Shown one piece after another: positions 6,147 through 58,078 of a stretch of 64,000 bases of DNA. How positions within the stretch are numbered: position 1 is the stretch's first letter; every line of letters begins with the position of its first letter. A model generated the notes under the pieces. The model did no database searches. It was not told the DNA's origin and saw nothing but the letters and a program-made list of their open reading frames with translations. The position numbers and the translations under genes were made by a program. Origin of the DNA: Octopus sinensis (taxonomy: Eukaryota); assembly GCF_006345805.1 (NCBI RefSeq), contig NC_043009.1, forward strand, positions 42,470,001 to 42,534,000. The letters run 5' to 3'.

Positions 6147-6379
6147 AAGGCGGCGAGCTGGCAGAGACGTTAGCACGCCGGGAGAAGTGCTTCGCGGTAT
6201 TTCGCCCGTCGCTACGTTCTGAGTTCAAATTCAGCCGAGGTCGACTTTACCTTTCATCCTTTCCGGGTCGATAAATTAAGTACCAGTTACGCACTGGGGT
6301 CGATATAATCGACTTAATCCGTTTGTCTGTCCTTGTTTGTCCCCTCTATGTTTAGCCCCTTGTGGGTAGTAAAGAAATA
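6147..6379 (+). mobile_element. Family-B SINE, extended-tail subfamily; 15-bp TSD (6094-6108 / 6380-6394) and 38 bp of extra 5' sequence
   Basis: GGCGGCGAGCTGGCAGA head, B-box GAGTTCAAATTC, tail ...AGCCCCTTGTGGGTAGTAAAGAAATA. Direct repeat TATATTTTACTTACC on both sides. Confidence 0.85.
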
Positions 6380-6714
6380 TATATTTTACTTACCAGCATC
6401 TTCTTGCTGATCAACATCCTGCACAGATTATTTGTTTTTAACGATCAAATGCTTGTACTATACATTATCTCATACCCTCCACCAAAACGACGTTGCCAGT
6501 ACAGATGCACAATTACGTCATATGTCAGATGTCGAAATGATCGCAGAGCAATATTGAAACGGAGTGATTTGCTCGAAATCAAAACGCACCATCCCGTCCG
6601 GGAATTGAACCAAAGTCTACATGATCATGAATGCAACACCCCTAACCACTAAGCCTTGTCTTCAAAAACAAGAAACGCTACAATAACAGCAATAATACCA
6701 AGAATATATACTTA

Positions 6715-7212
6715 CTAGCAGTATCGCCCGGCGTTGCTCGGGTTTGTAAGGGAAATAACTATATAAGCATTTTTAGAGAGTTATAGCCAAAAAAAGCAAA
6801 ACATTGCACTAAAAATGGAAAAAGAATGATGGTAAATTCTTTTAAAAATCGTTGACTCATCGTAGACATTTTTAGAGAGATACTTCCCTTATATAATAGC
6901 GAAAAAATGCATTAAAATGGGAAAAAATGATGGTAAATTCTTTTTAAAATCGTTGACTCATTGTAGACATTTTTAGAGAGATACTTCCCTTATATAATAG
7001 CGAAAAAATGCATTAAAATGGAAGAAAATGATGGTAAATTTTTTTTAAAATCGTAGACTCATCGTAGACGCGCGCTAATACCCAGAAGGGCTCGATATGA
7101 ATCACGACTATAAAATACCCGGTTTTGGTTAAACTGCACCGCAAAATGTGGGAGTAGTTAGGAATCTAAATCGTAGGAGACAGACACACAACTTGACTTT
7201 TATATATAAAGA
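6715..7212 (-). mobile_element. Non-autonomous Helitron with ~100-bp internal tandem repeats
   Basis: Minus strand starts A|TCTTTATATATAAAAG and ends with hairpin CCCGAGCAACGCCGGG (6727-6742) plus CTAG|T. Internal units start at 6769, 6868 and 6969. Confidence 0.8.
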
Positions 7213-7457
7213 TATGATAGATTGTTATCTGTGGCAACAGAAATGTTTAATAATTAGGTGGAATGGTGGAAATTTAAAGAAATAAAACCAGATTTAGAAG
7301 TTAATTCTAAACTTGCAGATATTTGATTGACAGGTTTTCTGACAAAAAATTTGCTAAATCAAATAAATAGGTTAGTCAGCCATTGTTGATCAACAACAAC
7401 AATAGCAGCAATAACAACAGCAAAAACGAAAGCAATATCAACAGCGAAGACAAAATA

Positions 7458-7542
<85 letters not shown>

Positions 7543-7646
7543 TCCATTCATATGTTTTTACCAGGCATGTAAAAAATAACAAAATGGTACGTATGTATGT
7601 GTGTGTGTGTGTGTGAGTATGTGTGTGAGTGTGTGAGTCTGTGTAT

Positions 7647-7694
<48 letters not shown>

Positions 7695-7837
7695 CGATCT
7701 GTTTTGAGACTGCTCTGTTCCAGTAAGTTAAGCATGGCTTGTAATGATATACACAGTGAAGAAACAAAGTGAGGGCAGTTCCAGGGTGGTGGGCACGCTT
7801 CGTGGATGCCAATACCTTCATCCCTATCGCCACCACC

Positions 7838-7869
<32 letters not shown>

Positions 7870-8319
7870 CAATAACAACGACGACGGCGACAGCAACAAT
7901 GACAGCAACTGTAAACAGCAACAACAATAATACAAAACAATGACATGACTACATTAACAATTGTAGAGGTGGGAATATATATATATATGTGTGTGTGTGT
8001 ATATGTATGTATATGTATATATATATGTATGTATATATATGTGTATGTATGTATTTATGTATGTATATATAATGTATGTATGTATACATGAATGTATATA
8101 TATATAGATGTATGTATGTATATATGCACACACATATATGTGCATAGGGTGAGGGAGTGAGAGAGAGAGAGAGTGTGTGTGTGATTTCATTTGATTACCT
8201 CTGGTTTTGTGTTTATGAAGAAAGGTGTGTGCTAAAAGAAAGTTCCTCTGTGGCCAATAGAAAACAAGTAAGAAAGTCAGGAAAAAATGTCCTTCCAAAA
8301 CGGAAAATATTAATAATAA

Positions 8320-9104
8320 TGGTTTCAAATTTTGCCTCAAGGACAGCAATTTCGGGGTAGGGGATGAGCTGATTACAATGGACCCCAGTGTTCAACTGGT
8401 ACTTATTTATCGACCCTGAAAGTCAACCTCGGCGGAATTTGAACTCAAAACGTAACGGCAGACGAAACACCTATTTCTTTACTACCCACAGGGTGCTAAA
8501 CAAAGAGAGGACAAACAAGGACAGACAAACGGATTCAGTCGATTATATCGACCCCAGTGCGTAACTGGTACTTATTTAATCGACCCCGAAAGGATGAAAG
8601 GCAAAGTCGACCTCGGCGGAATTTGAACTCAGAACGTAACGGCAGACGAAATACCGCTAAGCATTTCGCCCGGCGTGCTAACGATTCTGCCAGCTCGCCG
8701 CCTTAGTATAGTGCAAAAATATTAATATCTGAATCACTAACTGGAATAAACTGTCTGCTGGATTCTAAAACACTTTGGAATAACTCCAAAAGTTTAAAGA
8801 TGTACTTATTACCTATGTCACTAAAATCACCAAGTAACTGATAAACTGTTGTTTCAGAAGGGAAGAGTAAAAACGCTGCTTAATACCGAGAGTGATGGAA
8901 CGGAAAATATCTTTATCGCGCTTACATATCTTAGTTTTTTTTCTTCTTAGGTTTTGATAATTCATATTTCGGTTTGGCAAGAGGCTTATGATTTTTAAGA
9001 GTAAAGTATGGCTCTCAAAACGCTAAATTTTCTAGACCATCGCATATATTGAGACGAAATACCGCTAAGAATTTCGTCCGGCTTGCTGACGATTCTGCCA
9101 GCTC
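8320..9104 (-). mobile_element. Older family-B SINE (8320-8471 plus 9052-9104) split by a 580-bp insertion (extended-tail SINE 8472-8704 plus unique flank 8705-9051)
   Basis: The two halves join into a contiguous consensus. AGACGAAA(C/T)ACC is duplicated at 8460-8471 and 9052-9063. The insert is a reverse-complement copy of 19602 to about 20184/20368. Confidence 0.85.
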
Positions 9105-9194
9105 AATAATAATGACGACGGCGATGATGATGATGAAGATGATGTTGACGACGTCAGTGACAGGGGCTATATAGCTTACTCAGCTTCAAATTGC

Positions 9195-9720
9195 TGACAT
9201 GAGGCACCCATTTTCCAAGTTTAGGAACCTTTCCAAGTTGTTGAAGATGATGATGAACTGTTGTATGGTTTAGACTGAACTTTATTGCCAATTCATCAAC
9301 TGATAATGCAGGATTTTCTTCAAGTAATGTCTAAAGGATCTTATCATCAAACTCAACTGGACGTCCTGTTCGATCTTCATCTTCAAGGCTGAAATCTCCA
9401 CTTCTGAAGTTTGCAAAGCATCTTCTGCAAGTTCTTTCATTCAAGCATTCTTTCCCATAAACTGAGTGTATGTTTCGAGTTGCTTCGGCTGCAGAGTTTC
9501 CTTTTTGTACTCATAAAGCATTATGTACCTTAAATGCTCTTTGGATACTTCCATATTAGAAAGGGTTTTAATCAAAGAAATTTTAATTCTGTTATTCTGT
9601 AAAATAATATTTAATTAGTTTAAATGCACACAAATGCATAAAAATAATTTTTAATTCCATTAGACATTCTAAAATACTTGAAAAAAGGTAAAATCGGACA
9701 GAACTTATAGGATGACCTGA
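9195..9720 (-). mobile_element. Mariner (Mos1/Hsmar-like) 5' half with degenerate transposase N-terminus
   Basis: TA|TCAGGTCATCCTATAAGTTCTGTCCG terminus. ATG at 9554 gives MEVSKEHLRYIMLYEYKK-GNSAAEATRNIHSVYG...FRSGDFSLEDEDRTGRP...KLGKWVPH, with one frameshift and one stop. Confidence 0.9.
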
Positions 9721-9774
9721 TAATTAAATTCTGTCTGTAATAGTTCGATGGAAGACACCAACCGGTTTTACAGT

Positions 9775-9975
9775 TTACACTGATGTTGCATGTCGTCGGC
9801 TTATCTTTCGGAATGAGAAGATATGGTCGTGATAACGGACCTTAAATTGGTTTGTAGAGGCTCCTATGTATGCGCATTTATGTTGTGGTGTGGTGACTGT
9901 GCATTCGTACATGAGGTTTCTTTGCATGCATTGCGCACCTGGAGAACTACGCTGCGTGGAAACAATTGTAGTGAT
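9775..9975 (-). mobile_element. Penelope-like GIY-YIG endonuclease fragment
   Basis: CMQRNLMYECTVTTPQHKCAYIGASTNQFKVRYHDHIFSFRK matches the PLE GIY-YIG pattern (N.IY...V...YIG....FK.RY..H..SFR). Confidence 0.8.
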
Positions 9976-10374
9976 TAAGAAATAAATGTCCAATCGTACC
10001 CGTACTTGGTGACTCCAATTTTTTCAATTACGTATTCACATACGAGAGATGCCCAAACGCAAACCTGGAAGTACGTATAATGCCACTACTGGATAGCACA
10101 GGGTAAATCTAAAGCTGGACGAGCTTTATACTGTGCCCTACTACTTTCTTAACAGAATATATCATAAGTATATATATATACACACACACACACACACATA
10201 GAGAGATAGACAGACAGAGGCAGGTAGATAAAAGAGACATAGATACACAAACATACATAAATACACACATATATGCGTGTGTATATTCTTTTAATTTTTT
10301 CACTTGTTTCAGTCATTTGACTGCGGCCAAGCTGGAGCATAAAACAAATCAGCGTAATAATTTACAATCAGTAA

Positions 10375-10530
10375 TAATGGCTTCAAATTTTGGCACAAGG
10401 CCAGTAATTTTGGGTGAGGGGTTAAGTCAGTAAGATCGACCCCAGTGCTCAACCGGTTCTTATTTTATCGACCCCGAAAGCATGAAAGGCAAGTCAACCT
10501 CAGCAGTATTTGAACTCAGAACGTAGAGCT
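10375..10530 (-). mobile_element. Family-B SINE, degenerate
   Basis: Reverse body motif CGACCCCGAAAG.ATGAAAGGCAAGTCAACCTC...TTTGAACTCAGAACG. Confidence 0.75.
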
Positions 10531-11244
10531 CACCACCTTCTGATTTTTGGACACTGATACATAATAAAGATACTGTTCAGTTCTCTCCTTACAACAAAGC
10601 CAAGTGTTGCTACTTTAGCCTCATCAGAGAACTCTCTTACGATCAACACCAAGTTCCTACCTAATATCATTTAATAAATAGGTTCTGAATAACTTCAACC
10701 AATTTCTACCTTCTCTTCTTCCTGATACACATCACACTATTCCTCTCATTCATAAATAGCTGTATACACCTCCTTGTATAACACCTCACATCTTATCTTC
10801 CATATAAGGCTGCGGCGATGCTGCGATATAAAGAAAACCTGTTATGTAAAAATGACCGAGATTCTGTTAGTCTTTGTTTCAAAATACCTCAACGAAAGAG
10901 TAAAAGCCATTCATTAAAATGTTTTGATCTTTCCAGCCTACACACGTTAATACGAGCGGTAAATCTTTTGTTGTCATTTAGTTGACGAACGAAGGTACAG
11001 ACAAACATCATTAGAAACTTGTTTGAGTCAGATCTCGGCTAAATAAACTTTCATAAGAATAGCCTGTGTTTCTGATTGGCTCGATGGAGACGTTTCTTTT
11101 CAATGAAAATGTACTATCTATATGGGGTGTGTATATATGTGTATGGTTTTGTGTATGTATATATATATATGTATATATGCATATGTATCTTCACACAAAA
11201 CATTATCTGTCTAGCTGTTTGCTAGTTTTTTTTCTCTCTCTCTC

Positions 11245-11309
<65 letters not shown>

Positions 11310-11332
11310 ATATATATATATATATATACACA

Positions 11333-11364
<32 letters not shown>

Positions 11365-11498
11365 CATACATATATATACATACATACATGCATATATATA
11401 TACATAATAATAATATTAGGGAGTATAATTCCAAACTTACAGGGAAAAATTCAATTTAGTATTAAATCAAATTTCACAATATAAATATATATATATAT

Positions 11499-11780
11499 AA
11501 ATTAGAGAAAAGCCACTATTATGTAATTCAAACAATGATAGCCATAAACCAAATCATATAGAAAAAATAAATTATATTATAAAACATATATCAAGATCAC
11601 AAAAAGTACAAAAAAATGAATAAACAATATATAATAAGTAAAAAGACTATATATTGTTTATTCAAATTTTTTGTACTTTTGTGATCTAGTTATGTTTTAT
11701 CATATATTTTATTTTTTCTATGTGATATGGTTTATGTCTATCATTGTTTGAATTACATAATAGTGGTTTTTCTCAATTTT
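11499..11780. repeat. Near-perfect ~280-bp palindrome (~134-bp arms, 14-nt loop)
   Basis: 11499-11633 is the reverse complement of 11648-11780, with scattered mismatches. Loop is ATAAGTAAAAAGAC. Confidence 0.9.
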
Positions 11781-11799
11781 TATATATATATATATATAT

Positions 11800-12170
11800 A
11801 GGGGAGAATTTACCAAAAAAATCATCAAAACACGAAGACAGATGGTGTAGACAACAGACAGATGTATTAGTATATCGCTCGGGAAGTGAAAAAGTCTTTA
11901 ACGTTTCGAGCCTATGCTCTTCCACAGAAAGGAACACAGAAAGAAACAAGGAGAGAAAATAAAGAATGTGTAGTAGCTAGCGATCTATCATGGCGAATAC
12001 CGGACAGAGAAGTCACAGAGAAGAGCTAGGAAGAAGGGGAGATAATAAAGTAGTGGTGATCCCAAAATGAAGATGCGCGTGCGTGTGTATAAGAGCGCAT
12101 GTATGTGCCAGCTTAATTTAATTCGTCCTTAGTCGAAAGACACCTGTTGTTAATGTCCTGTTATTTGTAT
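11800..12170 (-). mobile_element. Neptune-like Penelope 3'-end (pLTR) fragment with a hammerhead-like motif
   Basis: Homologous to 16590-16750 (GATCCCAAAATGAAG; GAGC-TAG-GCTCGAAACGT..AAGAC). Confidence 0.7.
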
Positions 12171-12456: not shown

Positions 12457-12548
<92 letters not shown>

Positions 12549-13160: not shown

Positions 13161-13184
13161 GTTCATATATATACTTACACTATG

Positions 13185-13362: not shown

Positions 13363-13429
<67 letters not shown>

Positions 13430-14827: not shown

Positions 14828-14894
<67 letters not shown>

Positions 14895-15576
14895 ATATAT
14901 ATATATCTGCTGTAATATTTACAGCTTTAAAAAATGTTATATATGAAACAATTGTACTAAATTACCGGATCCATTCTTGTTGCTTATTTTTGAATATAAT
15001 CACCCCGCATATTTTATGGGTAATACCATAAAAAATTCTGGTGCATCTAAATTAAGTACCATATTTATTTGAATCTAAATTGTTTGCTGAACTTATATAT
15101 TATATATATATTCTCTGGCTGGTTCAATGTTTGTAAAAAAAAGCGGAACGAAATATAGTGGAAAATTATAACACTTTCCGGGAGGGTAAGGAGAGTCACT
15201 TTGCATCAGTCGGTGTGATCCATGGTTAAAGCGTGTTAGTTGTGTGTGTGTGTGCGCAAGTATGTCATTCCCTTGTCCAAAAATGTCCACGTAGTCAAAA
15301 CGAATATCCGCTCATGAGAGCAGCGTACGAATTTTTTTTAGTTCAGGAAAGCACCCTTATGTGAATTGTTTAGAATGATTCTCCTGAGCGCCACCAAAAA
15401 GTTGCAATGCCTACTTCCGTTTGGATACGGTCTAGGCTGTACCAGTAATTTCCTGCTTCCTCCTTTAATCACCATATGTGTATGTGTGTGCTTATTTGTA
15501 TGTATGCATGCACGTACGTAGGTATTTATGTATGTGTCTTTCTCTCTCACTCTATATATATATGGGAGGGTAGTAT

Positions 15577-15705
15577 GCATGTATGTATGTATGTATGTAT
15601 GTATGTATGTATGTATGTATGTATGTAGTATGTATGCATGTATCATTATGTATGTGTGATTTATGTATGTATGTATGCATGTCATGTATGTATGTATGTA
15701 TGCAG

Positions 15706-15739
<34 letters not shown>

Positions 15740-16075
15740 TGTATGTATGTGTGTGTGTATTATGTATGTATGTATGTATGTATGTATGCATGCAGTATGT
15801 ATATGTATGTATATATGTATGGTATATGTATGTATGGATGTATGTATGTATGTATTATGTATGCATGCATGTATGTATGTTATGTATGCATGTATGTATG
15901 TATGTATGTATTATGTATGTATGTATGTATGTGTATGTATGCATGTACGTATGCATGCATGCATGTATGTATGTATGTATGTATATATGTATGTATGTAT
16001 GTATGTATGCATGCATGTATGTATGTATGTATGTATGTATGTATGTATGTATGTATGCATGTATGCATGCGTGCA
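15577..16075. repeat. Imperfect (ATGT)n microsatellite, ~500 bp
   Basis: Direct inspection; source of the MYVCMYVC ORFs. Confidence 0.95.
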
Positions 16076-19534: not shown

Positions 19535-19951
19535 ACAAGTATTTACACTGAAAATTCAAACAATTTTTAAGTATTATTCTTGACAAGAAATAGCTACCAG
19601 CCTCAATATATGCGATGGTCTAGAAAATTTAGCGTTTTGAGAGCCATACTTTACTCTTAAAAATCATAAGTATCTTGCCAAACCGAAATATGAATTATCA
19701 AAACCTAAGAAAAAAAAAAAACTAAGATATGTAAGCGCGATAAAGATATTTTCCGTTCCATCACTTTCGGTATTAAGCAGCGTTTTTACTCTTCCCTTCT
19801 GAAACACCAGTTTATCAGTTACTTGGTGATTTTAGTGACATAGGTAATAAGCACATCTTTAAACTTTTGGAGTTTTTCCAAAGTGTTTTAGAATTCAGCA
19901 GACAGTTTATTCCAGTTAGTGATTCAGATATTAATATTTTTGCACTATACT

Positions 19952-20695
19952 AAGGCGGCGAGCTGACAGAAACGTTAGCACGTCGGGCGAAATGCTTAGC
20001 GGTATTTCGTCTGCCGTTACGTTCTGAGTTCAAATTCCGCCGAGGTTGACTTTGCCTTTCATCTTTTCGGGGTCGATAAATTAAGTACCAGTTACGCACT
20101 GGGGTCGATATAATCGACTTAATCCGTCTGTCTGTCCTTGTTTGTCTCCTCTGTGTTTAGCCCCCTGTGGGTAGTAAAGAAATAGGTATTTCGTCTGCCG
20201 TTACGTTCTGAGTTCAAATTCCGCCGAGGTCGACTTTGCCTTTCATCCTTTCGGAGTCGATTAAATAAGTACCAGTTACGCACTGGGGTCGATATAATCG
20301 ACTGAATCCGTTTGTCTGTCCTTGTTTGTCCTCTCTGTGTTTAGCCCCTTGTGGGTAATAAAGAAATATGTATTTCGTCTGCCGTTACGTTCTGAGTTCA
20401 AATTCCGCCGAGATCGACTTTGCCTTTCATCATTTCGGGGTTAAGTAAAGTACCAGTTACGGGCTGGGTTCGATCTAATCGACTTAATCTCTTTGTCTGT
20501 TCTTGAATCGTTAGCACGATGGGCAAAGTGTTTAGTGGCATTTCAGTATGTTTTAAGTTCAAATTCCGCCGGGGTCGACTTTGCCTTTCATCCTTACGGA
20601 GTCGATAAAATAAGTACCAGCTGAGCACTGGAATCGATGCAATCGATTTCCACCCTTCCCCACAAGTGCTGGCCTCCTCCCAAAATTTGAACCTA
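19952..20695 (+). mobile_element. Family-B SINE tandem array: one head, 184-bp units starting at 20001, 20185 and 20369, then an older copy
   Basis: (G/T)GTATTTCGTCTGCCGTTACG recurs with an exact 184-bp period. Confidence 0.9.
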
Positions 20696-23791: not shown

Positions 23792-23841
<50 letters not shown>

Positions 23842-24002
23842 CAATTATTATTATTATTTATTATTTATTATTATTATTATTATCATTTATCATTATTATT
23901 ATTATTATTATCAATATTATTATTATTATTATTATCAATTATTATTATTATTTATTATTATTTATTATTATTATTATTATCATTATTATTATTATTATTA
24001 TT
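23790..24002. repeat. Imperfect (TAT)n microsatellite (similar block at 24550-24715)
   Basis: Direct inspection. Confidence 0.95.
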
Positions 24003-24009
24003 AAAGCAG

Positions 24010-24520: not shown

Positions 24521-24552
<32 letters not shown>

Positions 24553-24653
24553 TATATTATTATTATTATATTATTATTATTATTATCATTAATTATTATT
24601 GTCATTATCATTATCATTATTGTTGTTGTTGTTATTATTATTATTATTATTAA

Positions 24654-24714
<61 letters not shown>

Positions 24715-26420: not shown

Positions 26421-26740
26421 ATAGGAGTGGCTGTGTGGAACCACATTGTTCCGGGTTCAGTCCCACTGCATGGCACCTTGGGCAAGTGTCTTCTACTATA
26501 GCCTCAGGCCAACCAAACCTGAAAGAAGCCCGTCGTATATATGTATATATATATATGTATGTGTGTGCGTATTTGCTTGTTTGTCCCACCCTCAACATCA
26601 CTTGACAACCGATACTGGTGTGTTTACGTCCCCGTAATGTAGCGGTTCGGCAAAAGAGACCGATAGAATATGTCGATCTTCTCGACTAAAGGTGGTGCTC
26701 CAGCATGGCCACAGTCACATGACTGAAACAAGTAAAAGAG
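26421..26740 (+). mobile_element. Family-A SINE with internal deletions
   Basis: Head ATAGGAGTGGCTGTGTGG to tail GACTGAAACAAGTAAAAGAG. Confidence 0.85.
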
Positions 26741-26837
26741 TATATATAAATATATATGTGTGTGTATGTGTATCTTTGTGTCTCTGTTTGTTCCCTCACT
26801 ATCACTTGGCAACTGATGTCGGTATGTTTATGTCCCT

Positions 26838-27073
26838 TTAAGGGCGGTGAGCTGGCAGAAACGTTAGCACGCCAGGCGAACTGCTTAGCAGTATTTCATC
26901 TGCCGCCACGTTCTGAGTTCAAATTCCACCGAGGTCGACTTTGACTTTCATCCTTTCGGGGTCGATTAAATAAGTACCAGTCACGCACTAGGGTCGATAT
27001 AATCGACTGAATCCATTTGTCTGTCTTTGTTTGTCCTCTCTGTGTTTAGCCCCTTGTGGGTAGTAAAGAAATA
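26838..27073 (+). mobile_element. Extended-tail family-B SINE nested in a family-A tail, 17-bp TSD
   Basis: GGTATGTTTATGTCCCT at 26821-26837 and 27074-27090. The host tail resumes to about 27250. Confidence 0.9.
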
Positions 27074-27266
27074 GGTATGTTTATGTCCCTGTAACTTAGT
27101 TCAGCAAATGAGACCGATAAAATGAATAAGTTGTAGGCTTACACAGAATAAATCCTGAGGTTGATTTCTTCAACTAAAATCCTCTCAAGTGGTGCTCCAG
27201 CATGGCTGCAGACAAATGACCGAAACAAGTAAAAGGATAAAAGAATAAAAGAATATACATATGTAT

Positions 27267-37978: not shown

Positions 37979-38190
37979 AACTATATGTGTATGTGTGTAT
38001 ACATGCATATATATGAGAGAGAGAAACAGAGAGAGGTTGACTATGTAAGCCAAACCCACGTGATTTTTTTCCTGTCTCTCTTCTTTTAATCTCCTTCCTT
38101 CTCTCCCTCGTTTCTCTGGAACATTCCTGTAAGAAGGATTCTGTCCAAAACCTAGCTTTATGCGGCAACTAAATAATATTAACTGTGAAC

Positions 38191-38610
38191 AAGGCGGCGA
38201 GCTGGCAGAAATGTTAGCACGCAGGGCGAAATGCTTAGTGGTATTTCGTCTGCCGCTACGTTCTGAGTTCAAATTCCGCCGAGGTCGACTTTGCCTTTCA
38301 TCCTTTCGGGGTTGATTAAATAAGTACCGGTTACGCACTGGGGTCGATATAATCGACTTAATCCGTTTGTCTGTCCTTGTTTGTCCCCTCTGTGTATAGC
38401 CCCTTGTGGGCAGTAAAAAATAAGAAACCTTAGCAGGCTGGGCGAAATGCTTAGAGGTATTTTGTTTGCCGCAACGTTCTGAGTTCAAATTCCGCCGAGG
38501 TCGACATTGCTTTTCATCTTTTCGACGTCGATAAATTAAATACCAGTTGCAGTCGATCTAATTGACTGGTCCCCTTCCCCAAAAATTTTGGCCCTTGTGC
38601 CTAGAGTATA
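38191..38610 (+). mobile_element. Extended-tail family-B SINE (38191-38422) fused in front of an older family-B body; composite flanked by a 12-bp direct repeat
   Basis: AATATTAACTGT at 38175-38186 and 38615-38626. The second body starts AGAAACCTTAGCAGG. Confidence 0.8.
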
Positions 38611-38779
38611 AAAAAATATTAACTGTTAACATTTCTTGTACCTCTGCTATATTTATGTACTATCTTTTGTGTGTGTGTGTGTACATCTATATGGGCAGAC
38701 ATATTTGCAACAGTTATTTGGAAAATTGATATAAGCACATCCTATTGAATGGTTTCTTAGCCAGACACGGTTAACATCC

Positions 38780-41059: not shown

Positions 41060-41525
41060 CAATGATGCTGGTGGTGGTGATGATGATGATGATGATGATG
41101 ATGGTGATGGTGATGATTGTGGTGATGGTGGTGATGATGGTGATAGTAGTGATGGTAATGATGATGATGGTGGTGGTGGTAGTGATGGTGATAGTAGTGA
41201 TGATAATGATGATGATGGTGGTGGTGGTGGTGGTGGTGGTGATAGTGGTGATGATAATGATGATGATGGTGGTGGTGGTGGTGGTGGTGGTGGTGATAGT
41301 AGTGATGGTAATGATGATGATGGTGGTGGTGGTGGTGGTGGTGGTGTTGGTGATAGTAGTGATGGTAATGATGATCATGATCATGATCATCGGTGGTAAT
41401 GAGGATGATAATTGATAACACTGATGGTGGTCATCTTGATGATAATAACAACAGCAGTAATGCTGCTGCTGATGGTAATGATGACGATGATGATGGTGAT
41501 GACGACGACAATGATGATGATGATA
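41060..41525. repeat. (GAT/GGT)n tract with a higher-order repeat
   Basis: GGTGATAGTAGTGATG(G/A)TAATGATGATGAT(GGT)n recurs about 5 times at 41140-41380. Confidence 0.85.
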
Positions 41526-42454: not shown

Positions 42455-43995
42455 CTTTATTTCAAATTTTGGCACAAGGCCAGCAATTTCAGGGAAGGGG
42501 GTAAAGTTGATTACATCGACTCCAGTACTCACTCAACTGGTATTTATTTTATTGACATTGGAAGGATGAAAGGCAAAGCTGACTTCGTTAGAACTGCTGC
42601 TGTTAATATTGCTATCAGTATTAAGATTCCCAATAATGGCCTTGCTGTTCTGTAGCATAATTTTTTTAGTGGAGGGCAGCTCTTAAGATTAGCCATGTCA
42701 ATGCTTACATTTCTATTACTGTTATTTTTTTTTTTCACATTAAAAAGGCATATGACATGGATAATGTATTGAAGGGTTTCCGGGTAAGTCAATTACATTG
42801 ACCTTAATATTCAACTGATACTTACAATAAAAGGCAAAGACGACCTTGGCAGAACTTGAACTCAGAATATAAAATCAACTGAAATGTCACAATGTATTGT
42901 GCCCAGTGTGCTAATGATTCTGACAGCTCTTTGCCTTACTGCTGCTTTTAATACTGATTTCAATATTGTTACAAAATTGTGGAGGCACATGGCTTGATGG
43001 TTAGGGTGTTGGACTCATGGTCGTAAGATTGTGGTTTCGATTCCTGAACTGGGTGACGCATTGTGTCCTTGAGCAAAACACTTCATTTCATGTTGCTCCA
43101 CACCACTCAGATGGCAAAAATGAGCAATCCTGCAGCAGACCGGTGTCCTGTCCAGATTGGTAATATATATTCGCCATGGAAACCAGCCTTATGAGTCTGT
43201 ATGACTCGGGAAGGAACTTTACTTTTTAAAGGAAACAAGCTGGCAGAATTGTTTACATGCCAGGCAAAATGCTTAGTGGCATTTCGTCTGTCTTTACGTT
43301 CTGTGTTCAAATACCACCAAGATCAACTTTGCCTTTCATCCACCGAGGTCGTTGCCAGTACCCTGGACTGGCTCCTGTGCAGGTGGCACATAAAAAGCAC
43401 CATCTGGGCGTGGCCACAGCCAGAGCCGCCTGACTGGCCTGTGCAGGTGACATGTAAAAACACCCGCTATACTCTCGGAGTGGTTGGCGTTAGGAAGGGC
43501 ATCCAGCTGTAGAAACTCTGCCAGATCAGATTAGTGTCTGGTGCAGCAATCTGGTTCACCAGACCTCTGTCAAATCGTCCAACCTATCCTAGCATGGAAA
43601 GTGGACGTTAAACGACGACAACGATGACGACGATGACAATGATGATATATATATATATAAGAGGAGATGGTATTATCAGGGGTCAAGGAAATAAGTACCA
43701 GTTATGCACTAGGGTTAATCTAATTGATTTACCTCATTCCATACAATTTCTGGCCTTGTGCAAAAATTTGAAACTAATATTTAAGGCAGCAAGCTGGCTG
43801 AATTGTTAATATGGTGGTCAAAATGCTTAGCGGCATGTCATCCATCTTTACATTTTGAATTCAGATTCTACCCAGGTTGACTTTGCCTTTCATCTTTTCA
43901 GGGTCAATAAAATAAGTACCAGTTGAATACTGGGGTTGATGTAATCGACTCACCACTTCATGTAAAGTACTAGCTTCATACCAAAATTTAAAAAC
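42455..43995. mobile_element. Cluster of SINE remnants: family B (42455-42590 -, 42780-42930 -, 43235-43350 +, 43785-43995 +), CORE variant (42980-43200 +), family C (43360-43645 +)
   Basis: Diagnostic body motifs as described above. Confidence 0.7.
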
Positions 43996-46210: not shown

Positions 46211-46243
<33 letters not shown>

Positions 46244-46366: not shown

Positions 46367-46458
<92 letters not shown>

Positions 46459-50801: not shown

Positions 50802-50851
<50 letters not shown>

Positions 50852-51539: not shown

Positions 51540-52085
51540 GAGAAAAGAGAGGGTATTTCCAGGGTTAGGATGTCTCATAAGAGAAGCAGAGAGAGGAAGG
51601 AAGAGAAAGAGTGGGGTCAGATAAGGAATAGGGAGATGTATAGTAGGAAAGCAAGTGGAAGGGGGGGGGAAGAGAGGGGTGAGAGGGAGAAAGAGAGATA
51701 AAGAGGGGAACAGTGGGTAGGGGAGGAAGAAAGAGAAGAAAAGTGAGAAAAGAGTGAGGGAGAGAAAGAGAGGAAGAGAGAAAAAGAGAGAGAGGGGAGG
51801 AGGAATGAGAAATGGAAGAGCAATGAGAGAGAGAGAGAGAGAGAGAGAAAGGAGGAATGGGAGCGAAAGAGAGAGGAGAGATGGGTGGGAGGAAGAAAGA
51901 GAGAGAAAGAGGGATAGAGATGGAGAGGGAAGGAGGGAGAAAGAGAGATGAAGTAATAAGGAGGAAGAGGGAAAGAAAGAGCAAAAGGGATGAGAAAGAG
52001 GTGTGAAAAGAAGAAAGAGAGAGAAAAGAAGAGAGAAGGAAAGGTGGGAGAAAAGACAGATGTGGAGAGAGAGAGAGGGAGAGAG
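51540..52085. repeat. Purine-rich (GA/GGA)n low-complexity tract
   Basis: Direct inspection. Confidence 0.9.
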
Positions 52086-52216
52086 ACCGTGATGCCTTCC
52101 TTTTATTTTGATTGATGCTCCTATTTCCTGCCAGTTGCTATTACTAAGAACTTGTAAAGTTTACAATTCCATATGAGTGCTAGCAAACCAGAAGGGGATA
52201 GTTAAGATCAGCCAGC

Positions 52217-52268
<52 letters not shown>

Positions 52269-52411
52269 GAATAAATTAATAAATAAATAAGAGAAATGAA
52301 ATGAAGTAAAAGGAACAAATAAATAAAGATAGGTATATCACTTCCTTTTGACAATTGGTGGAGATTGACCTAGAGAATATTGCTCATTGGAAGGAAATTC
52401 CTTCTCAATAT

Positions 52412-52442
<31 letters not shown>

Positions 52443-52462
52443 GATGATGATGATGATGATGA

Positions 52463-52667
52463 TACTCTTTACTTGTTTCAGTCATTTGACTGTGGCCATG
52501 CTGGAGCACCATCTTTAGTCAAGCAAATCGACCCCGGGACTTATCCTTTGTAAGCCTGGTACTTATTCTATCGGTCTCTTTTGCCGAACTGCTAAGTTAC
52601 GAGGACGTAAACACTCCAGCATCGGTTGTCAAGCGATGTTGGGGGACATACACAGACACACAAACAT

Positions 52668-52700
<33 letters not shown>

Positions 52701-52867
52701 CATGATGGGCTTCTTTCAGTTTCTGTCTACCAAATCCACTCACAAGGCTTTGGTCGGCCCAAGGCTATAGTAGAAGACACTTGCCTAAGGTGCCACACAG
52801 TGGGACTGACACCCAGAGCCATGTGGTTCGTAAGCAAGCTACTTACCACACAACCACTCCTACACCT
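52463..52867 (-). mobile_element. Family-A SINE, full length
   Basis: Complete architecture. Confidence 0.9.
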
Positions 52868-52900
52868 ACTTGAAGATGACGGATAAAAATAATAATAATG

Positions 52901-52969
<69 letters not shown>

Positions 52970-53218
52970 TCCTATCATAGTAGGTGCATTAGGCATGATA
53001 AAAAAATATTCAGACAAATACATAACAAAAACACCAGGAATTACAAACACATATAACATACAGAAAATTGCACTACTAGGCACTGCACACATCCTACGCA
53101 GAACACTTTCCATACAATAACCATCAGAGCATCACAACAAATCACAGCACATACCCAAGGCACACAGAGCTGCGCTCGGTAGTGAAGTGAAAGCACGCTA
53201 TAAAAATAAAACTACTAA
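52970..53218 (+). mobile_element. R4/Dong-like LINE 3' end embedded in (TAA)n
   Basis: PIIVGALGMIKKYSDKYITKTPGITNTYNIQKIALLGTAHILRRTLSIQ* (stop 53118-53120), intact frame, with TAA repeats on both sides. Confidence 0.85.
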
Positions 53219-53689
53219 ATAATAATAATAATAAGAAGAAGAAGAAGAATATGGGCCCTCACCTGCAAGGTCATGCACTGTTTATCTTGATATGAGATCA
53301 CCATGTTGTGCACACATGGTTGTGATGCATGTGCCTGGTGGACCCTTATCAGACAGGTAGTCATGATGGGTATATTGGGCTTCATATATTTGCACCCCAG
53401 TATCATTTTGATGGCATGCACTGCTCTCTCACTCAATAATAATAATAATAATAATAATAATAATTTAGGCACAAGACAAACAGTTTTTGCGAAGAAGCGG
53501 ATGTCATTTACATTGACTCCAGTTCTTGACTGATAATTATATTAAGGACTCTGTAAGGACGTAAGGCAAAGTTGCCCGTAATGTTAAGATTAAACATTTT
53601 GTCCTGTGTGCTTATGATTCTATCAGTTCACTGCCACAGTAATAATAATTATAAAGTTGTAACTGAGGCTGAAAATGTAAAATCTTGTA

Positions 53690-54110
53690 AAAGACCAAAA
53701 TAATTAAGTCTGTTTTGTGATTAACATAAGTATTCCTTGTAATCATAATACAGAGCCAAAAGAACTGGACAAGCTTAGAAAATACAAAGATTTGCTCATT
53801 GAAATTGAAAACAATGTGACATCTGAAGGCTGTTAAAATACCAGTGATTGCAGGAGCAAAAAAAGGAACTGAAAATTATTTGAGAATGATTTCTGGCTTA
53901 CCATTTCTGCAAAATGTGCAAAAGATTGCTTTAACTGATATATCACACATATTGAGATGAGCATTGTTGCTGCGAGAATGATAATCTCCCATGAACACTC
54001 TTGTGTGTTTATTTTAATGGCCTACAATGTATCTTTGCCCTAGGTGTCAGGAGACTTTCGGCAAGAAATGGGAACTAAATTGAAGGAATAACAAAATTCA
54101 TAATAATAAT
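53690..54110 (+). mobile_element. R4/Dong-like LINE 3' end (RLE domain, degenerate)
   Basis: CFVINISIPCNHNTEPKELDKLRKYKDLLIEIE..WHLKAVKIPVIAGA..VQKIALT..SHILR; ends in TAA repeats. Confidence 0.8.
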
Positions 54111-54641
54111 AATCATAAAAACTACTACTACTAGTATGATGATGATGATGATGATGATGATCGAGCAGTTACTGATACTTCAAACAACAATTCTTGTTAT
54201 CAAGATATTGAAACAAAGCATTGGATACATTCATTGTTGTCCAGTGTTTTTATCTTAGAGCCATGATGCATTAACACAGACATTTAAATGATGAACCACA
54301 AAGATTAAAAATGACATAGATTTTCTTTATCATTTCTTTTTTGTATAAAGGGTTGTTTCTTATTTTTTTCCGGACCAGGCTTTGGATTTGATGATCTGAT
54401 AAGAGTTTATGAAATAAGACAATGCTGAAGGATGCAGCCGTAATCTTACTGGGTCATCATTCTCGGCATCATCATCATCATCATCATCACCATCACTATC
54501 ATCATCACCATCATCATCATTATCATCATGATCATTAAGATAATCCATTAAGCTTATAGTGTTGAAAATCTATGAATATATCTACATGGATGGATATAAA
54601 TAAAGATGGATACGTATATACATACATAAATGCATGCATAT

Positions 54642-54675
<34 letters not shown>

Positions 54676-55040
54676 GTCATTCATCTTTCATAAGTAAAAG
54701 ACAAAAAATACCTTTTAGTCGATTTTTTCAACTATAACCTTGATGAATTTTAGTTAAACAAATCAACCCCAGGACTTTGTTTTTTAAGCTTAGTATTTAT
54801 TCTATTGGTCTCTTTTGCTGAACTGCTAAGCTACAGTGTCATAAACACACCAACACTGGTTATCAAGCAGTGTGGGGGAGAAAGATACACTCATAGATAC
54901 ATACATACATATATATATAATTATATATATATGTCCGTATATATACGTATATATATATATATACGTACATATATATACTTACACACATATATATATATAC
55001 ATATATATATACATACAGACATATACATATATGCACATAT

Positions 55041-55088
<48 letters not shown>

Positions 55089-55540
55089 ATACATGTATAT
55101 ATGTATATATAATCTACTAATATAATAATTTTAAATCCTACTATATCGTATAATAAAATAAAGTACATTAGAATTAATTAAAAATTATATAAACACATTT
55201 TAAAAATATATATACCTTACCTGTTATTCGTCTGTGGGGAAAGAAGATAATTCTGTGCTGGTGGGTTGTTTTACCAGGCTATACTTAATACATAAATCCA
55301 CCAGTGCGTCCTCAGGCTGTTTTTTTTATATTAATATTATTAACGGATCCTACTTAATCATACAAAATTCTAAGATATCTTCATTAATATAAGAATAAAA
55401 ATAAGAATATCTATATAAATTACTTCCTAATATATTTTTACAAAATTTAAAATATTTTAAAAATAAAAAAATTATAAAATTACAAAATTTTAAATAATTC
55501 ATAAAAATTTAATAAAATTAAACACCTAAAAATATAATAA

Positions 55541-55592
<52 letters not shown>

Positions 55593-55899
55593 GCCAAACA
55601 TAAAGAAACTCTCATCGACTATCATCAAATTAAACCGCCTATCTATATACACTCTACGGGAATTAATAGTTTATTGTGAAATTTACCCCTATCAATACTA
55701 TTATATGTTACCATTATTATGTCAAACGCAAGTTAATAATATTTAAAAAGTAAAAAGCCTCTATATATGTTATAAATTTATTGAATAAAAATAGTAAATG
55801 AAACTATTTACCACAATTAATAAAGGAAGAATACTTATCTGCATGTTTACTCCTTCTTTAACCTGTGCAAATGGCTGCACCTTCTGTCCTGTGCTAAAT

Positions 55900-57645
55900 A
55901 TTATGGGAATAAAAAACACTACTCTAAAATAATTTGAGAGTTAACAAAAAAGTATAAAATGAAGTAAATAACGAAAATGTATAAAATTGTTAATGAAGAT
56001 AAATAACAATAACAATATATCTAAAAATGTCAAGACGAAATATGGTTTAGAAAATAGAACTGAACCATATGTCCCTATACACCCTAGAATAACCATTAAG
56101 GACCATAAAAACAATTTTTATTCTAGCCATCAAGTAAGACTGATATGCCCAAGTAAATCCGATATAGGAAGATTAAGTAAACTTATGTTAGATAAATATA
56201 TAGATAAACTTAATACAGGAAATAACCTTAAATTATGGAGTTGTACCCGAGATACATTAAATTGGTTCAGCAATATTAAGGATAAAAATAGGTGTAAATT
56301 TATCCAAAGAGATTTGAAAATTATTATTCAGCTATTAACGAGATTATTCTAAATAAGGCCCTCACATATGCTATGAGAAAGGTTAATATGACATATGATG
56401 AAGTTAATGTAGTACTTTCGGCGAGGAAATCCCTAATTAGGTATAAAAATAAACTATGGGCGAGGAAGGACACAAGGGATTGCTGCGATATACCCGCGGG
56501 TGCCCCAGACTCAGCACAAATAACAGATTTAGTAGGAAGATACCTATTATCTGAACTTGGGTTAAAACATCTTAACTTAGAAGGAGGTCTTTATAAAGAT
56601 GACCTAATCCTAATAACGAAAAACTGCACTAATATATCATTAGAAAATATAAAGAAAAATATATAATTTTTTTAAAGAATTATAGTCTTGATATATGTAT
56701 AGAGAAAGAGCATTCTGCCGTTAACTACCTGGATGCAAACCTAAACTTAGTAACCAATAGAACCCAACCATTCCATCAATTAAAGGAGAATCTAAAGTAC
56801 ATTAATGCCCATAGCAACCGCCCTCACTCAGTCAAACAAGCACTAATAGAAAATATAGATAAAAGAATTTCCATGTTATCCTCGGATATAGACACCTTTA
56901 ATAAACATGCCTCTTACTATAATAGAGCATTAAAAGAAGCAGGATATAATACGAAAATTAAATTCTATAATAATTACGGACCAAATAATAATACTAGGAA
57001 TCATCCTAACGCTCAAACTAACTACAGAGGTAATAGCAAAGATAATAATAAACAATATAAGGAAAGAAATAAAGATAAATATAATATAAGTATAAATAAA
57101 AATAATATTAATAAAAGTGCTCATAGTAAGGATAATACCAAAAAGAATTCGAATGGAAATAAGCATAATTATTATACACCCACGAAGAATACAAAGACCA
57201 AGAACAATAATAATAAGATGAATTATAATAATAGTAATATTAATAATAAAAAACATAAGGAAATAATATGGTTAATTATCCCTTATGGAGTCCAAATCGA
57301 AACTAACTTAATTAAAGAAATTCTGAAAATAATTAAAATATCTTTTAAAAAGAATAAAGAGTATTCGAAAATATTCTCAAAAAACCCATCAGAGTGGGAT
57401 ATTCGACAACAAGAAACATTAGTAATATTATATCCTCTATAAACAACGTTAAATTAAATAAATTCTTTAATAACAATTTAACTAATATTAATAATAGTTA
57501 CGGAAGAAATGTAACAAACAAAAAACATAACCTTATACTAAATAAATGTACATGTAAAGATAAATAAAAAGTTAGAAGTAATAATAATTGCAACCTAGAT
57601 AATGTAATTTATAAATGTACTGTAAGCTCAAATAATAATAGTAAT
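55900..57645 (+). mobile_element. Penelope-like element (RT plus start of C-terminal GIY-YIG), Hydra-clade-like, about three frameshifts
   Basis: ITIKDHKNNF..VRLICPSKSDIG; FIQRDLK/NYYSAI; GAPDSAQITDLVG; GLYKDD; VNYLDANLNL; YINAHSNRPHS..YYNRALKEAGY; IIWLIIPY; VGYSTTRN; KCTCKDK..NVIYKCTV. Cut by (TG)n at about 57649. Confidence 0.9.
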
Positions 57646-57647
57646 AA

Positions 57648-57686
<39 letters not shown>

Positions 57687-57857
57687 TGTGTTCTACCTGT
57701 TATGCTACTCTAGCATCAAATTTATATTCGAAAATAAAGGTAAGGAAAAATTCTTTTATGCTAGCTCATCTTGTTCTTGCTTCTTTTTTTTTGTATTCAA
57801 ATCCTCCTTGTCAAAAAATTTTAATCACTTAGAATTCCAATGCAATAAATAAATACC

Positions 57858-58078
57858 TATTTCTTTATTACCCACAAGGGGCTAAACACAGAGGGGACAA
57901 ACAAGGACAGACATAGGTATTAAGTCGATTACATCGACCTCAGTGCGTAACTGGTACTTAATTTATCGACCCTGAAAGGATGAAAGGCAAAGTCGACCTC
58001 GGCGGAATTCGAACTCACAACGTAACGCAGACGAAATACCGCTAAGCATTTCGCCCGGCGTGCTAACGTTTCTGCCAG
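57858..58078 (-). mobile_element. Extended-tail family-B SINE, near consensus
   Basis: Tail CCCCTTGTGGGTAATAAAGAAATA followed by GGTATTT. Confidence 0.9.

What the first reader, a model, noticed from the sequence alone, without database searches (positions are those of the whole stretch)
6147..58078. A young LINE-tailed SINE subfamily with a palindromic 3' junction that nests inside SINEs, including its own family
Seen: copies ending ...TAAAGAAATA at 6379, 8472(-), 20184, 20368, 27073 and 57858(-) are followed by TATATTTT, GGTGTTTC, GGTATTTC, TGTATTTC, GGTATGTT and GGTATTTA. Each junction is therefore GAAATA-NN-TATTT, a mini inverted repeat of the element's own end (one mismatch in two cases). 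TSDs of 15, 12 and 17 bp start at these NN-TATTT sites. GGTATTTC occurs in the family-B head, and copies at 8472, 20001-20368 and 38191 sit in family-B SINEs while 26838 sits in a family-A SINE. The 38422 junction does not fit the motif. Known: 12-17 bp TSDs fit TPRT by APE-type LINEs, and Tx1-group LINEs are often target-specific. Inference: a sequence-preferring LINE mobilises this SINE into a site the SINE itself carries, giving self-targeting and tandem growth. I do not know of a description of this.
Basis: partly seen in the sequence, partly recalled or inferred. Interest (0 to 1): 0.72.

Follow-up and report, generated by a model that had tools for sequence, protein, structure and literature searches.

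The report
SINE subfamily with a TATT-type insertion-site preference
A 233-bp tRNA-like SINE subfamily really does insert next to a short AT-rich motif (NN-TATT, often GGTATTT) that the SINE carries in its own head, so it sometimes lands inside relatives; this is an ordinary target preference of retrotransposition, not a new mechanism.

Summary
The six junctions are not six independent events. The 8472(-) and 20184(+) elements share a 349-bp 5' extension at 97% identity. The 20184 and 20368 junctions are the SINE's own position 50 inside an in-register 184-bp tandem that has no TSD. The 38422 "exception" is not a priming junction: one 16-bp TSD flanks the whole composite, whose true 3' flank reads AA-TATT. 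That leaves five independent events. Four have TATT at +3..+6 (background 1.1%, P~8e-8) and three start with GGTAT (P~5e-9). Upstream TSD copies and uninterrupted host repeats show the motif comes from the target, not the element. Older short-tail copies of the same family use the same register (AT-TATT, often in (ATT)n). The preference therefore belongs to the family or its partner LINE, and the GAAATA/TATTTC palindrome is probably incidental. Self-nesting is proven once (12-bp TSD). Tandem growth by self-targeting is plausible but unproven. No partner LINE is in the window, so the Tx1 idea is untested. No outside copies could be retrieved. The copies lie 2-7% from their consensus, so they are not very young.

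The parts
6147..6379 (+). Long-tail family-B SINE copy (full length, 233 bp). It is preceded by a 38-nt extra 5' segment (6109-6146). The TSD TATATTTTACTTACC lies at 6094-6108 and 6380-6394.
   Evidence: The 3' flank reads TA-TATT-TT. Three nucleotides (ATA) are ambiguous between the element end and the TSD.
8472..9051 (-). Retrotransposed unit made of a 5' extension (9051-8705, with up to 2 further nt ambiguous) plus a long-tail SINE (8704-8472). It is nested in sense orientation in a short-tail B SINE.
   Evidence: The 12-bp TSD is GGTATTTCGTCT (9063-9052) / GGTGTTTCGTCT (8471-8460).
8321..9104 (-). Host short-tail B SINE, split by the nest. The head is 9104-9052 and the remainder 8471-8321, ending ...TTTGAAACC. 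Its own TSD is ATTATTATT (9113-9105 / 8320-8312).
19604..19951 (+). Second copy of the 5' extension (97.4% identical to 9051-8705). The homology ends at the same 5' base (+/-2 nt) as in the nest, so it marks a defined RNA 5' end or a transcription start.
   Evidence: No SINE head lies upstream and no TSD was found.
19952..20505 (+). In-register head-to-tail array: U1 (positions 1-233; 19952-20184), U2 (positions 50-233; 20185-20368) and U3 (positions 51-189; 20369-20505). It is followed by a 5'-truncated short-tail unit, U4 (20506-20691).
   Evidence: TRF reports period 184, 2.8 copies and 91% matches. Relatedness to the 8704 copy is mosaic.
26840..27073 (+). Long-tail SINE copy nested in a family-A (CORE-like) SINE. 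The 17-bp TSD GGTATGTTTATGTCCCT lies at 26821-26837 and 27074-27090.
   Evidence: Uninterrupted family-A copies show the contiguous site GGTGTGTTTACGTCCCCGTAACTTAG.
38191..38614 (+). Composite of a full long-tail SINE (38191-38422) and a 5'-truncated short-tail B unit (38423-38614). A single TSD, AATATTAACTGT[G/T]AAC, flanks the whole (38175-38190 / 38615-38630).
   Evidence: The 3' flank of the composite reads AA-TATT-AA.
57858..58078 (-). Long-tail SINE copy, with the head truncated or rearranged at position 12. The 3' flank is GGTATTTATTT (57857-57847). No TSD was found.
   Evidence: The flanks are not a decayed B SINE (z<1.5).

Best explanation
These are copies of the most recent ('long-tail', ending ...GTAGTAAAGAAATA) subfamily of a tRNA-like SINE family, family B. 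An unidentified LINE moves them by target-primed reverse transcription.

Shown:
- The first nick falls immediately 5' of NN-TATT(T), often GG-TATTT, and TSDs of 12-17 bp start there.
- The motif is supplied by the target.
- Older short-tail members of the same family use the same register (AT-TATT) and often sit in (ATT)n microsatellites.

Inferred:
- The preference is a property of the family's partner LINE machinery, either its endonuclease or its priming step.
- A (TTA)n/(TAA)n-type specificity such as that of Dong-like LINEs is a lead only.
- The younger B subfamilies read GGTATTTCG at positions 50-58 of the head, where old copies read GGCATTTC. Their own head is therefore a good target.
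- It gets hit in sense orientation. That gives one proven nest and, after homology-assisted 5' joining or later unequal exchange, an in-register 184-bp tandem.
- The GAAATA-NN-TATTTC palindrome is a by-product of an A-rich element end meeting a T-rich target.
For: - Five independent long-tail TPRT junctions read TA-TATT, GG-TATT, GG-TATG, GG-TATT and AA-TATT.
- TATT at +3..+6 occurs in 4 of 5 against a background of 0.0112 (P~8e-8). GGTAT occurs in 3 of 5 against 0.00081 (P~5e-9).
- Upstream TSD copies contain the motif.
- Empty-site proxies exist in uninterrupted B and A copies.
- Copies whose flank lacks GG (6379, 38614) show that the element RNA does not end in GGTAT.
- Three of 8 short-tail copies have ATTATT flanks (P~8e-5). 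One has the TSD ATTATTATT, and two abut long (ATT)n arrays.
- The short and long tails end similarly: GCCTTGTGCCAAAATTTGAAACC against GCCCCTTGTGGGTAGTAAAGAAATA.
- About a third of the 27 GGTATTT sites in the window lie at position 50 of B SINEs, which cover about 7% of the window.
- There is a proven sense-orientation nest at position 50 with a 12-bp TSD.
- Literature: Dong LINEs, including one in a snail, target (TAA)n (PMC3812793). Dong-R4 is the most abundant recently active LINE group in Octopus vulgaris (PMC13282606). TSD-start signatures tied to 3' ends are known for RTE-related SINEs (PMC6007223).
Against: - The sample is tiny: five independent events, all from one 64-kb window.
- No partner LINE was found and no outside copies could be retrieved.
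- The short-tail (ATT)n may be partly an element-borne 3' microsatellite rather than target.
- GG at +1/+2 in 3 of 5 long-tail events is not seen in short-tail copies, so specificity may differ between subfamilies.
- The array at 19952-20505 has no TSD, and its history is mosaic and unresolved.
- The organism was not identified by any tool.
Confidence: 0.6

Rival explanations
1. Homology-guided priming instead of endonuclease specificity. The master copy sits inside a B SINE at position 50, as U1 does in the 19952 array. Read-through transcripts then end ...GAAAUA-GGUAUUUCGUCU..., and this 3' flank base-pairs with the nicked target strand, steering insertions to GGTATTT-like sites and especially to other B SINEs.
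For: - The 8704 nest and the 19604 locus carry the same 5' extension, and both are followed by GGT(A/G)TTTCGTCTGCC.
- The SINE has no internal T4 terminator, as seen by reading.
- Similarity of flanks to GGTATTTCGTCT decays with distance from the junction: 12, 7 and 5 nt.
Against: - The flanks at 6379 (TA-TATTTT) and 38615 (AA-TATTAA) keep target bases where an RNA-templated GG would be expected.
- Short-tail copies share the register without any such flank.
- There is no direct evidence that any copy in the window is a master.
Confidence: 0.15
2. The head-to-tail B arrays and composites are not products of self-targeted insertion. This covers 19952-20691, 38191-38614 and also the three old copies in 2-548. 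They would instead be chimeric cDNAs made by reverse-transcriptase template switching between SINE RNAs, and/or DNA-level unequal exchange, slippage or gene conversion after a single event.
For: - One TSD flanks the whole 38191 composite, and there is none at the internal junction.
- No TSD is present anywhere in the 19604-20691 array.
- The U3/U4 and o317/o118 junctions join a 3'-truncated unit to a 5'-truncated unit.
- Mosaic pattern over positions 50-233: the 8704 copy equals U2 at 8 sites and equals U1 at 3 sites.
- Arrays also occur among old short-tail copies.
Against: - Two successive junctions fall at exactly position 50/51, the same site as the TSD-proven nest. Template switching does not predict this without an ad hoc RT stop.
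- A same-family nest resolved by homology at its 5' end would look identical, so the models are not separable here.
Confidence: 0.3
3. GGTAT(TT) is part of the element consensus (the true 3' end), and the apparent target preference is an annotation artefact.
For: Four of seven copies are followed by GGT(A/G)T.
Against: - The upstream TSD copies at 9063-9052 and 26821-26837 contain GGTAT.
- Uninterrupted host-family copies carry the site.
- The copies at 6379 and 38422 lack it.
Confidence: 0.02
4. Chance in an AT-rich genome. The shared flank motif carries no information.
For: The window is 28-42% GC. A one-mismatch NNTATTT occurs at 6% of positions.
Against: Exact TATT at a fixed offset in 4 of 5 independent events has P~8e-8. 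GGTAT in 3 of 5 has P~5e-9. Even a generous correction for post hoc motif choice leaves this significant.
Confidence: 0.03

Closest known systems
L1-mobilised SINEs (Alu, Can-SINE) with the TT|AAAA nick preference
   Same: LINE-driven TPRT with 12-17-bp TSDs whose first bases carry the endonuclease or priming signature. In dog, for example, Can-SINE TSDs begin with A4 (PMC11699766). From my own knowledge, the SINE's own A-rich tail is itself a preferred target, which gives SINE-next-to-SINE clusters.
   Different: Here the element has no poly(A). The TSD start is T-rich (NN-TATT) and is not complementary to the RNA 3' end. The self-carried target lies inside the tRNA-like head rather than the tail, so hits give in-register partial tandems.
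Microsatellite-targeting LINEs, especially Dong ((TAA)n; Bombyx, Anopheles, the snail Biomphalaria)
   Same: Short-tail B copies sit in or next to (ATT)n, which is the complement of (TAA)n, and one has the TSD ATTATTATT. The long-tail motif TATT is a fragment of (TTA)n. Dong targets (TAA)n (PMC3812793), and Dong-R4 elements are abundant and recently active in an octopus genome (PMC13282606).
   Different: Long-tail copies insert at isolated TATT sites in unique DNA and in two SINE families, not in microsatellites. No LINE was found, so the clade and the endonuclease type are unknown.
RTE-related SINE insertion signature (Nishiyama and Ohshima 2018)
   Same: A non-poly(A) SINE and LINE pair with a reproducible TSD-start signature that correlates with the element's 3' end (PMC6007223).
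   Different: That signature is a T at the TSD start about 10 nt downstream of a T stretch. No upstream T stretch is evident at the three TSD-defined sites here.
Tx1-group and other strictly site-specific LINEs
   Same: The idea that a LINE prefers a sequence carried by another repeat.
   Different: Insertions here occur in at least four unrelated contexts (unique DNA twice, family A, family B). This is a short-motif preference, not site specificity. No Tx1-like ORF is present in the window.
Chimeric retrocopies made by RT template switching (for example U6/L1 chimeras; my own knowledge)
   Same: The 38191-38614 composite has two RNA-derived units joined head-to-tail inside one TSD.
   Different: Both units belong to the same SINE family, so a same-family nest resolved by homology cannot be excluded.
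Octopus tRNA-derived SINEs OK, OR1 and OR2 (Ohshima and Okada 1994, cited in PMC4758252)
   Same: tRNA-like short retroposons in a cephalopod-like, SINE-rich, AT-rich genome. Family A here has a CORE-like segment, judged by eye.
   Different: Identity with any named family was not tested, because no consensus library was available. The organism is inferred from my memory of these repeats only.

Membership tests
tRNA-derived SINE | tRNA-related head with internal Pol III A and B boxes | tested here: inconclusive
   ARAGORN finds no tRNA and Rfam finds no match. A B-box-like GAGTTCAAATTCC and an A-box-like TTAGCACGCCGGG are visible by eye. The head folds as one long hairpin, not a cloverleaf.
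tRNA-derived SINE | Short, non-coding, dispersed and multi-copy, with variable-length TSDs | tested here: met
   24 B-family intervals lie in 64 kb, seven of them long-tail copies of 233 bp or less. TSDs of 12-17 bp were found.
tRNA-derived SINE | 3' tail shared with a partner LINE | not testable with these tools
   No LINE ORF or Pfam domain is present in the window. No eukaryotic genome or repeat library was available. DNA scans of the public collections gave only chance 19-20-mers.
Target-preferring TPRT (LINE endonuclease signature at the TSD start) | A non-random motif at a fixed offset from the 3' junction that is present in the pre-insertion site | tested here: met
   TATT at +3..+6 in 4 of 5 independent events (P~8e-8) and GGTAT in 3 of 5 (P~5e-9). 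The motif is present in upstream TSD copies and in uninterrupted host repeats.
Strictly site-specific LINE/SINE system (Tx1 group, R2, Utopia and similar) | Nearly all insertions fall in one defined multicopy target sequence | tested here: not met
   The targets are unique DNA (6379, 57858), family A (27073), family B position 50 (8472) and another unique site (38615).
Microsatellite-targeting (Dong-like) system | Insertions lie within (TAA)n/(TTA)n arrays | tested here: inconclusive
   Short-tail copies: 3 of 8 have ATTATT flanks, one has the TSD ATTATTATT, and two abut long (ATT)n arrays. Long-tail copies are not in microsatellites and share only the TATT core.
SINE-derived tandem repeat or satellite | Head-to-tail in-register units of constant period | tested here: met
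   TRF reports 20001-20505 with period 184, 2.8 copies and 91% matches. This is a single small array.

The most novel reading that the evidence does not exclude
The palindromic junction is mechanistic. The partner LINE's RNP would recognise the same GAAATA motif twice: at the 3' end of the SINE RNA, and on the primer strand of the target, whose bottom strand reads 5'-GAAATA-CC-3'OH at GG-TATTTC sites. The long-tail subfamily would then home to the hairpin-forming CGAAAT...ATTTCG segment of its own tRNA-like head and build in-register tandem arrays. That would be a retrotranspositional route from SINE to satellite DNA.
Probability: 0.08. Interest if true: 0.65.

Novelty: new member of a known kind. 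Interest (0 to 1): 0.3.

Why it matters
If confirmed genome-wide, the NN-TATT signature would be a practical handle for identifying the LINE that drives the large SINE expansion in this apparently cephalopod genome. It would also explain part of the SINE-in-SINE clustering and the small SINE-derived tandem arrays that complicate repeat annotation there. It does not require a new mechanism. It extends the familiar rule that a retroposon carrying its mobiliser's preferred nick site becomes a target for its own family.

Tried and rejected
1. Outside copies. Exact-pattern scans of the metagenome, prokaryote-genome and viral collections with TGTGGGTARTAAAGAAATA gave only chance 19-20-mers. A protein search with the stop-free antisense SINE ORF found nothing. 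An exact look-up of a window ORF was not on record. No larger sample could be built.

2. Partner LINE. The ten longest ORFs have no Pfam domain.

3. Rfam and ARAGORN found nothing.

4. I tested whether the flanks at 57858 and 6379 are decayed B SINEs, which would have made them extra self-nests. They are rejected at z<1.5 against shuffles.

5. I tested whether the 38-nt 5' extension of the 6147 copy is homologous to the end of the 349-nt extension, which would have made the 'SINE' the 3' end of a longer element. This is not significant: 11% of random 38-mers score as well. The extension has no other copy in the window.

6. A tail stem-loop or junction hairpin as a recognition structure: z-scores are about 0.

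7. I tested whether the long tail derives from the family-A 3' half. Only a 24-nt GT-rich block, GTTTGTCTGTCCTTGTTTGTCCCC, is shared (z~6 in 3 of 5 copies). The evidence is weak and low-complexity.

8. Sequence strings from the SINE were searched in the paper library, with no hits. One literature query timed out.


Full report
**What is there**

The window is AT-rich (28-42% GC) and full of short retroposons. It contains no tRNA gene, no Rfam family and no recognisable LINE ORF. The element in question is a 233-bp SINE that I call family B. Its head reads AAGGCGGCGAGCTGGCAGAAACGTTAGCACGCCGGGCGAAATGCTTAGCGGTATTTCGTCTGCC... and includes a B-box-like GAGTTCAAATTCC. BLAST with one copy finds 24 family-B intervals covering about 7% of the window.

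Seven copies carry the extended tail ...AATCCGTTTGTCTGTCCTTGTTTGTCCCCTCTGTGTTTAGCCCCTTGTGGGTAGTAAAGAAATA:
- 6147-6379 (+)
- 8704-8472 (-)
- 19952-20184 (+)
- 20185-20368 (+), positions 50-233 only
- 26840-27073 (+)
- 38191-38422 (+)
- 58078-57858 (-)

Older copies share positions 1-170 and then end ...CCCCAAAATTGCTGGCCTTGTGCCAAAATTTGAAACC. The last ~25 nt of the two tails are visibly related. The long-tail copies are 2.2-6.8% from their own consensus and differ pairwise by 7.8% on average. They are the youngest B subfamily here, but they are not very young. I believe from memory that these repeats are octopod; no tool confirmed this.

**Checking the observation**

Five corrections matter.

1. 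The 8472(-) and 20184(+) elements are not independent. Both consist of the same 349-bp non-SINE 5' extension, starting (CT)CAATATATGCG, followed by the SINE. The extensions are 97.4% identical and the homology stops at the same 5' base in both loci.

2. At 8472 this ~580-bp unit is a clean nest. A short-tail B SINE with its own TSD ATTATTATT is split after GGTATTTCGTCT, and that 12-mer is duplicated.

3. At 19604-20691 no host head lies upstream and no TSD was found at any candidate end. Instead U1 (positions 1-233), U2 (50-233) and U3 (51-189) form an in-register tandem of period 184 bp (TRF), followed by a 5'-truncated short-tail unit. The 'flanks' GGTATTTC and TGTATTTC are therefore the SINE's own position 50.

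4. The 6147 copy's TSD lies 38 nt upstream of the head, so this insert also carries extra 5' sequence.

5. The non-fitting 38422 junction is internal to a composite. A 16-bp TSD with one mismatch, AATATTAACTGT[G/T]AAC, flanks the long-tail SINE and a 5'-truncated short-tail unit together (38175-38190 / 38615-38630). The real priming junction is 38614|38615 and reads AA-TATT-AA.

**Is the motif more than chance?**

Counted conservatively there are five independent priming junctions:
- TA-TATT-TT (6379)
- GG-TATT-TC (8472, read from the upstream TSD copy)
- GG-TATG-TT (27073)
- GG-TATT-TA (57858)
- AA-TATT-AA (38615)

Per oriented position in the window, TATT occurs at 1.12%, NNTATTT at 0.40% and GGTAT at 0.081%. 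Four of five with TATT at +3..+6 gives P~8e-8. Three of five starting with GGTAT gives P~5e-9. Post hoc motif choice cannot absorb that.

**Element or target?**

- Both GGTAT-type TSDs contain the motif in their upstream copy.
- Uninterrupted B copies carry GG(T/C)ATTTCG at position 50.
- Seven uninterrupted family-A copies carry GGTGTGTTTACGTCCCCGTAACTTAG contiguous.
- The copies at 6379 and 38422 lack GGTAT after GAAATA.
- The flanks of the 57858 and 6379 copies are not decayed B SINEs.

The motif is therefore a target property.

**What it most likely is**

The short-tail copies are the natural control, and they show the same register. Three of eight have flanks AT-TATT-(A/T) (P~8e-5). One has the TSD ATTATTATT. 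Five of six have ATTATT directly upstream of the head. Two abut long (ATT)n arrays.

The preference for N|NN-TATT therefore predates the long tail and belongs to the family's mobilising machinery. Because short-tail copies end in GAAACC, the inverted-repeat relation between GAAATA and TATTTC is unlikely to be causal. In this AT-rich sequence I estimate the chance of a 5-nt reverse-complement match at some offset of 0-4 at roughly 2%. The tail and the junction have no significant predicted structure. I cannot exclude a mechanistic role, and I keep it as the 'novel case'.

The primer strand at GG-TATTTC sites ends 5'-GAAATACC-3'. That is identical in sense to the RNA 3' end, not complementary to it, so ordinary primer-template annealing does not explain the motif. 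Only the 6379 site has a 3-nt ATA overlap. An endonuclease or RNP sequence preference is the simplest reading.

TATT is the core of (TTA)n, the complement of (TAA)n. Dong LINEs target (TAA)n, including in a snail (PMC3812793). Dong-R4 is the most abundant recently active LINE group reported for Octopus vulgaris (PMC13282606). That makes Dong-like elements a lead for the partner and nothing more.

**Self-targeting**

Old B copies read GGCATTTC at position 50. The long-tail subfamily and a few short-tail copies read GGTATTTC. In the window about a third of the 27 GGTATTT sites lie at that position of B SINEs. A GGTATTT-liking machinery is therefore expected to hit B SINEs often and in sense orientation.

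One such hit is proven (8472). The 184-bp tandem has its two junctions at exactly the same position, which fits the same process followed by homology-assisted 5' joining or collapse of the duplicated head. It lacks TSDs, however.

A three-way comparison over positions 50-233 gives a mosaic. The 8704 copy matches U2 against U1 at eight sites, four of them subfamily-diagnostic. It matches U1 against U2 at three sites. That pattern points to gene conversion, recombination or template switching.

Composites also occur among old copies (positions 2-548), and the 38191 composite sits inside a single TSD. Template switching and unequal exchange therefore remain live alternatives for 'tandem growth'.

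Nesting enrichment is significant only if arrays are counted as nests: 4 of 6 events against roughly 15% SINE coverage gives P~0.01. With TSD-proven nests alone it is 2 of 6, P~0.27 (and my arithmetic).

**A second rival for the preference itself**

If the master sits in a B SINE, as U1 does, read-through RNA would end ...GAAAUA-GGUAUUUCG and could guide priming by base pairing. The shared 5' extension and the shared 3' flank of the two related loci fit this. The TA and AA at +1/+2 of the 6379 and 38615 sites, and the short-tail data, argue against it.

**Comparison with what is known**

Target-site signatures at the TSD start are standard for LINE-driven retroposition:
- TT|AAAA for L1, with A4-starting TSDs for Can-SINEs (PMC11699766).
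- A T-stretch signature for RTE-related SINEs (PMC6007223).
- Microsatellite targeting by Dong, Waldo, Kibi and others (PMC3812793).

From my own knowledge, a SINE that carries its mobiliser's preferred site and so attracts its own family is familiar from A-tail hits in Alu. What differs here is that the self-carried site lies in the head, so hits produce in-register partial tandems. I found no paper describing this family's target site.

The Tx1 suggestion is untested. The data do not fit strict site specificity, because the targets fall in four different contexts.

**Verdict**

- Observation: partly confirmed. It is real, but the events were overcounted, and one exception is explained.
- Interpretation: partly supported. 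Target preference and one self-nest hold. The palindrome, the Tx1 partner and tandem growth by self-targeting are not established.
- Novelty: a new member of a known kind.
- Interest: 0.3.

The decisive work is a genome-wide flank and TSD census and identification of the partner LINE. Neither was possible with the collections available here.

Noticed in passing
window 8705-9051 (-) and 19604-19951 (+): A 349-bp non-SINE sequence (97.4% identical in the two copies, with no other copy in the window) sits directly upstream of two long-tail SINE copies and ends at the same 5' base in both. It looks like a 5' transduction, or a longer transcription unit that uses the SINE as its 3' end. The 6147 copy carries an unrelated 38-nt 5' extension.
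   Followed up: partly
window 19952-20368 vs 8472-8704: Mosaic relatedness. The 8704 copy shares its head and 5' extension with U1. Over positions 96-197 it instead shares eight sites with U2, four of them subfamily-diagnostic (GATTAAATAAG / GACTGAAT / GTCCTCTCT). This suggests gene conversion or template switching among SINE copies.
   Followed up: partly
window 23792-24003, 24550-24713, 8312-8320, 9105-9113: Old short-tail B SINEs sit at the edge of long (ATT)n microsatellites or carry ATTATTATT TSDs. This points to a (TTA)n/(TAA)n-type target for the older subfamily.
   Followed up: partly
window 2-548 (-): Three old B copies lie head-to-tail. One junction joins a 3'-truncated unit to a 5'-truncated unit, much like the U3/U4 junction at 20505/20506. 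SINE composites are therefore not limited to the long-tail subfamily.
   Followed up: no
window 26438-27150 (+): Family-A (CORE-like) SINE 3' halves occur in partial tandem. Family-A copies end ...AAGTAAAAGAATA followed by (TA)n in about half of 12 copies. That end resembles the long-tail B end ...AGTAAAGAAATA, and a 24-nt GT-rich block is shared between the B long tail and family A.
   Followed up: partly
window 43342-43679 (+): A different ~340-bp repeat (GC-rich, ending in GAT/GAC triplets and (TA)n) is inserted inside an old B SINE, between 43341 and 43680.
   Followed up: no
window 6812-7069; 15573-16069; 41062-41379: Other tandem arrays: a 101-bp repeat (2.5 copies, 94% matches), a long (GTAT)n of about 127 copies, and a 48-54-bp GGT/GAT-rich minisatellite that creates several spurious long ORFs.
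   Followed up: no
window ~6160-6225 and the equivalent in every B copy: The B head is predicted to fold as one long hairpin (-38.7 kcal/mol, z -2.1) rather than a cloverleaf. The nest site GGTATTTCG forms the 3' arm near the apex (CGAAATGC-TTAG-CGGTATTTCG).
   Followed up: partly
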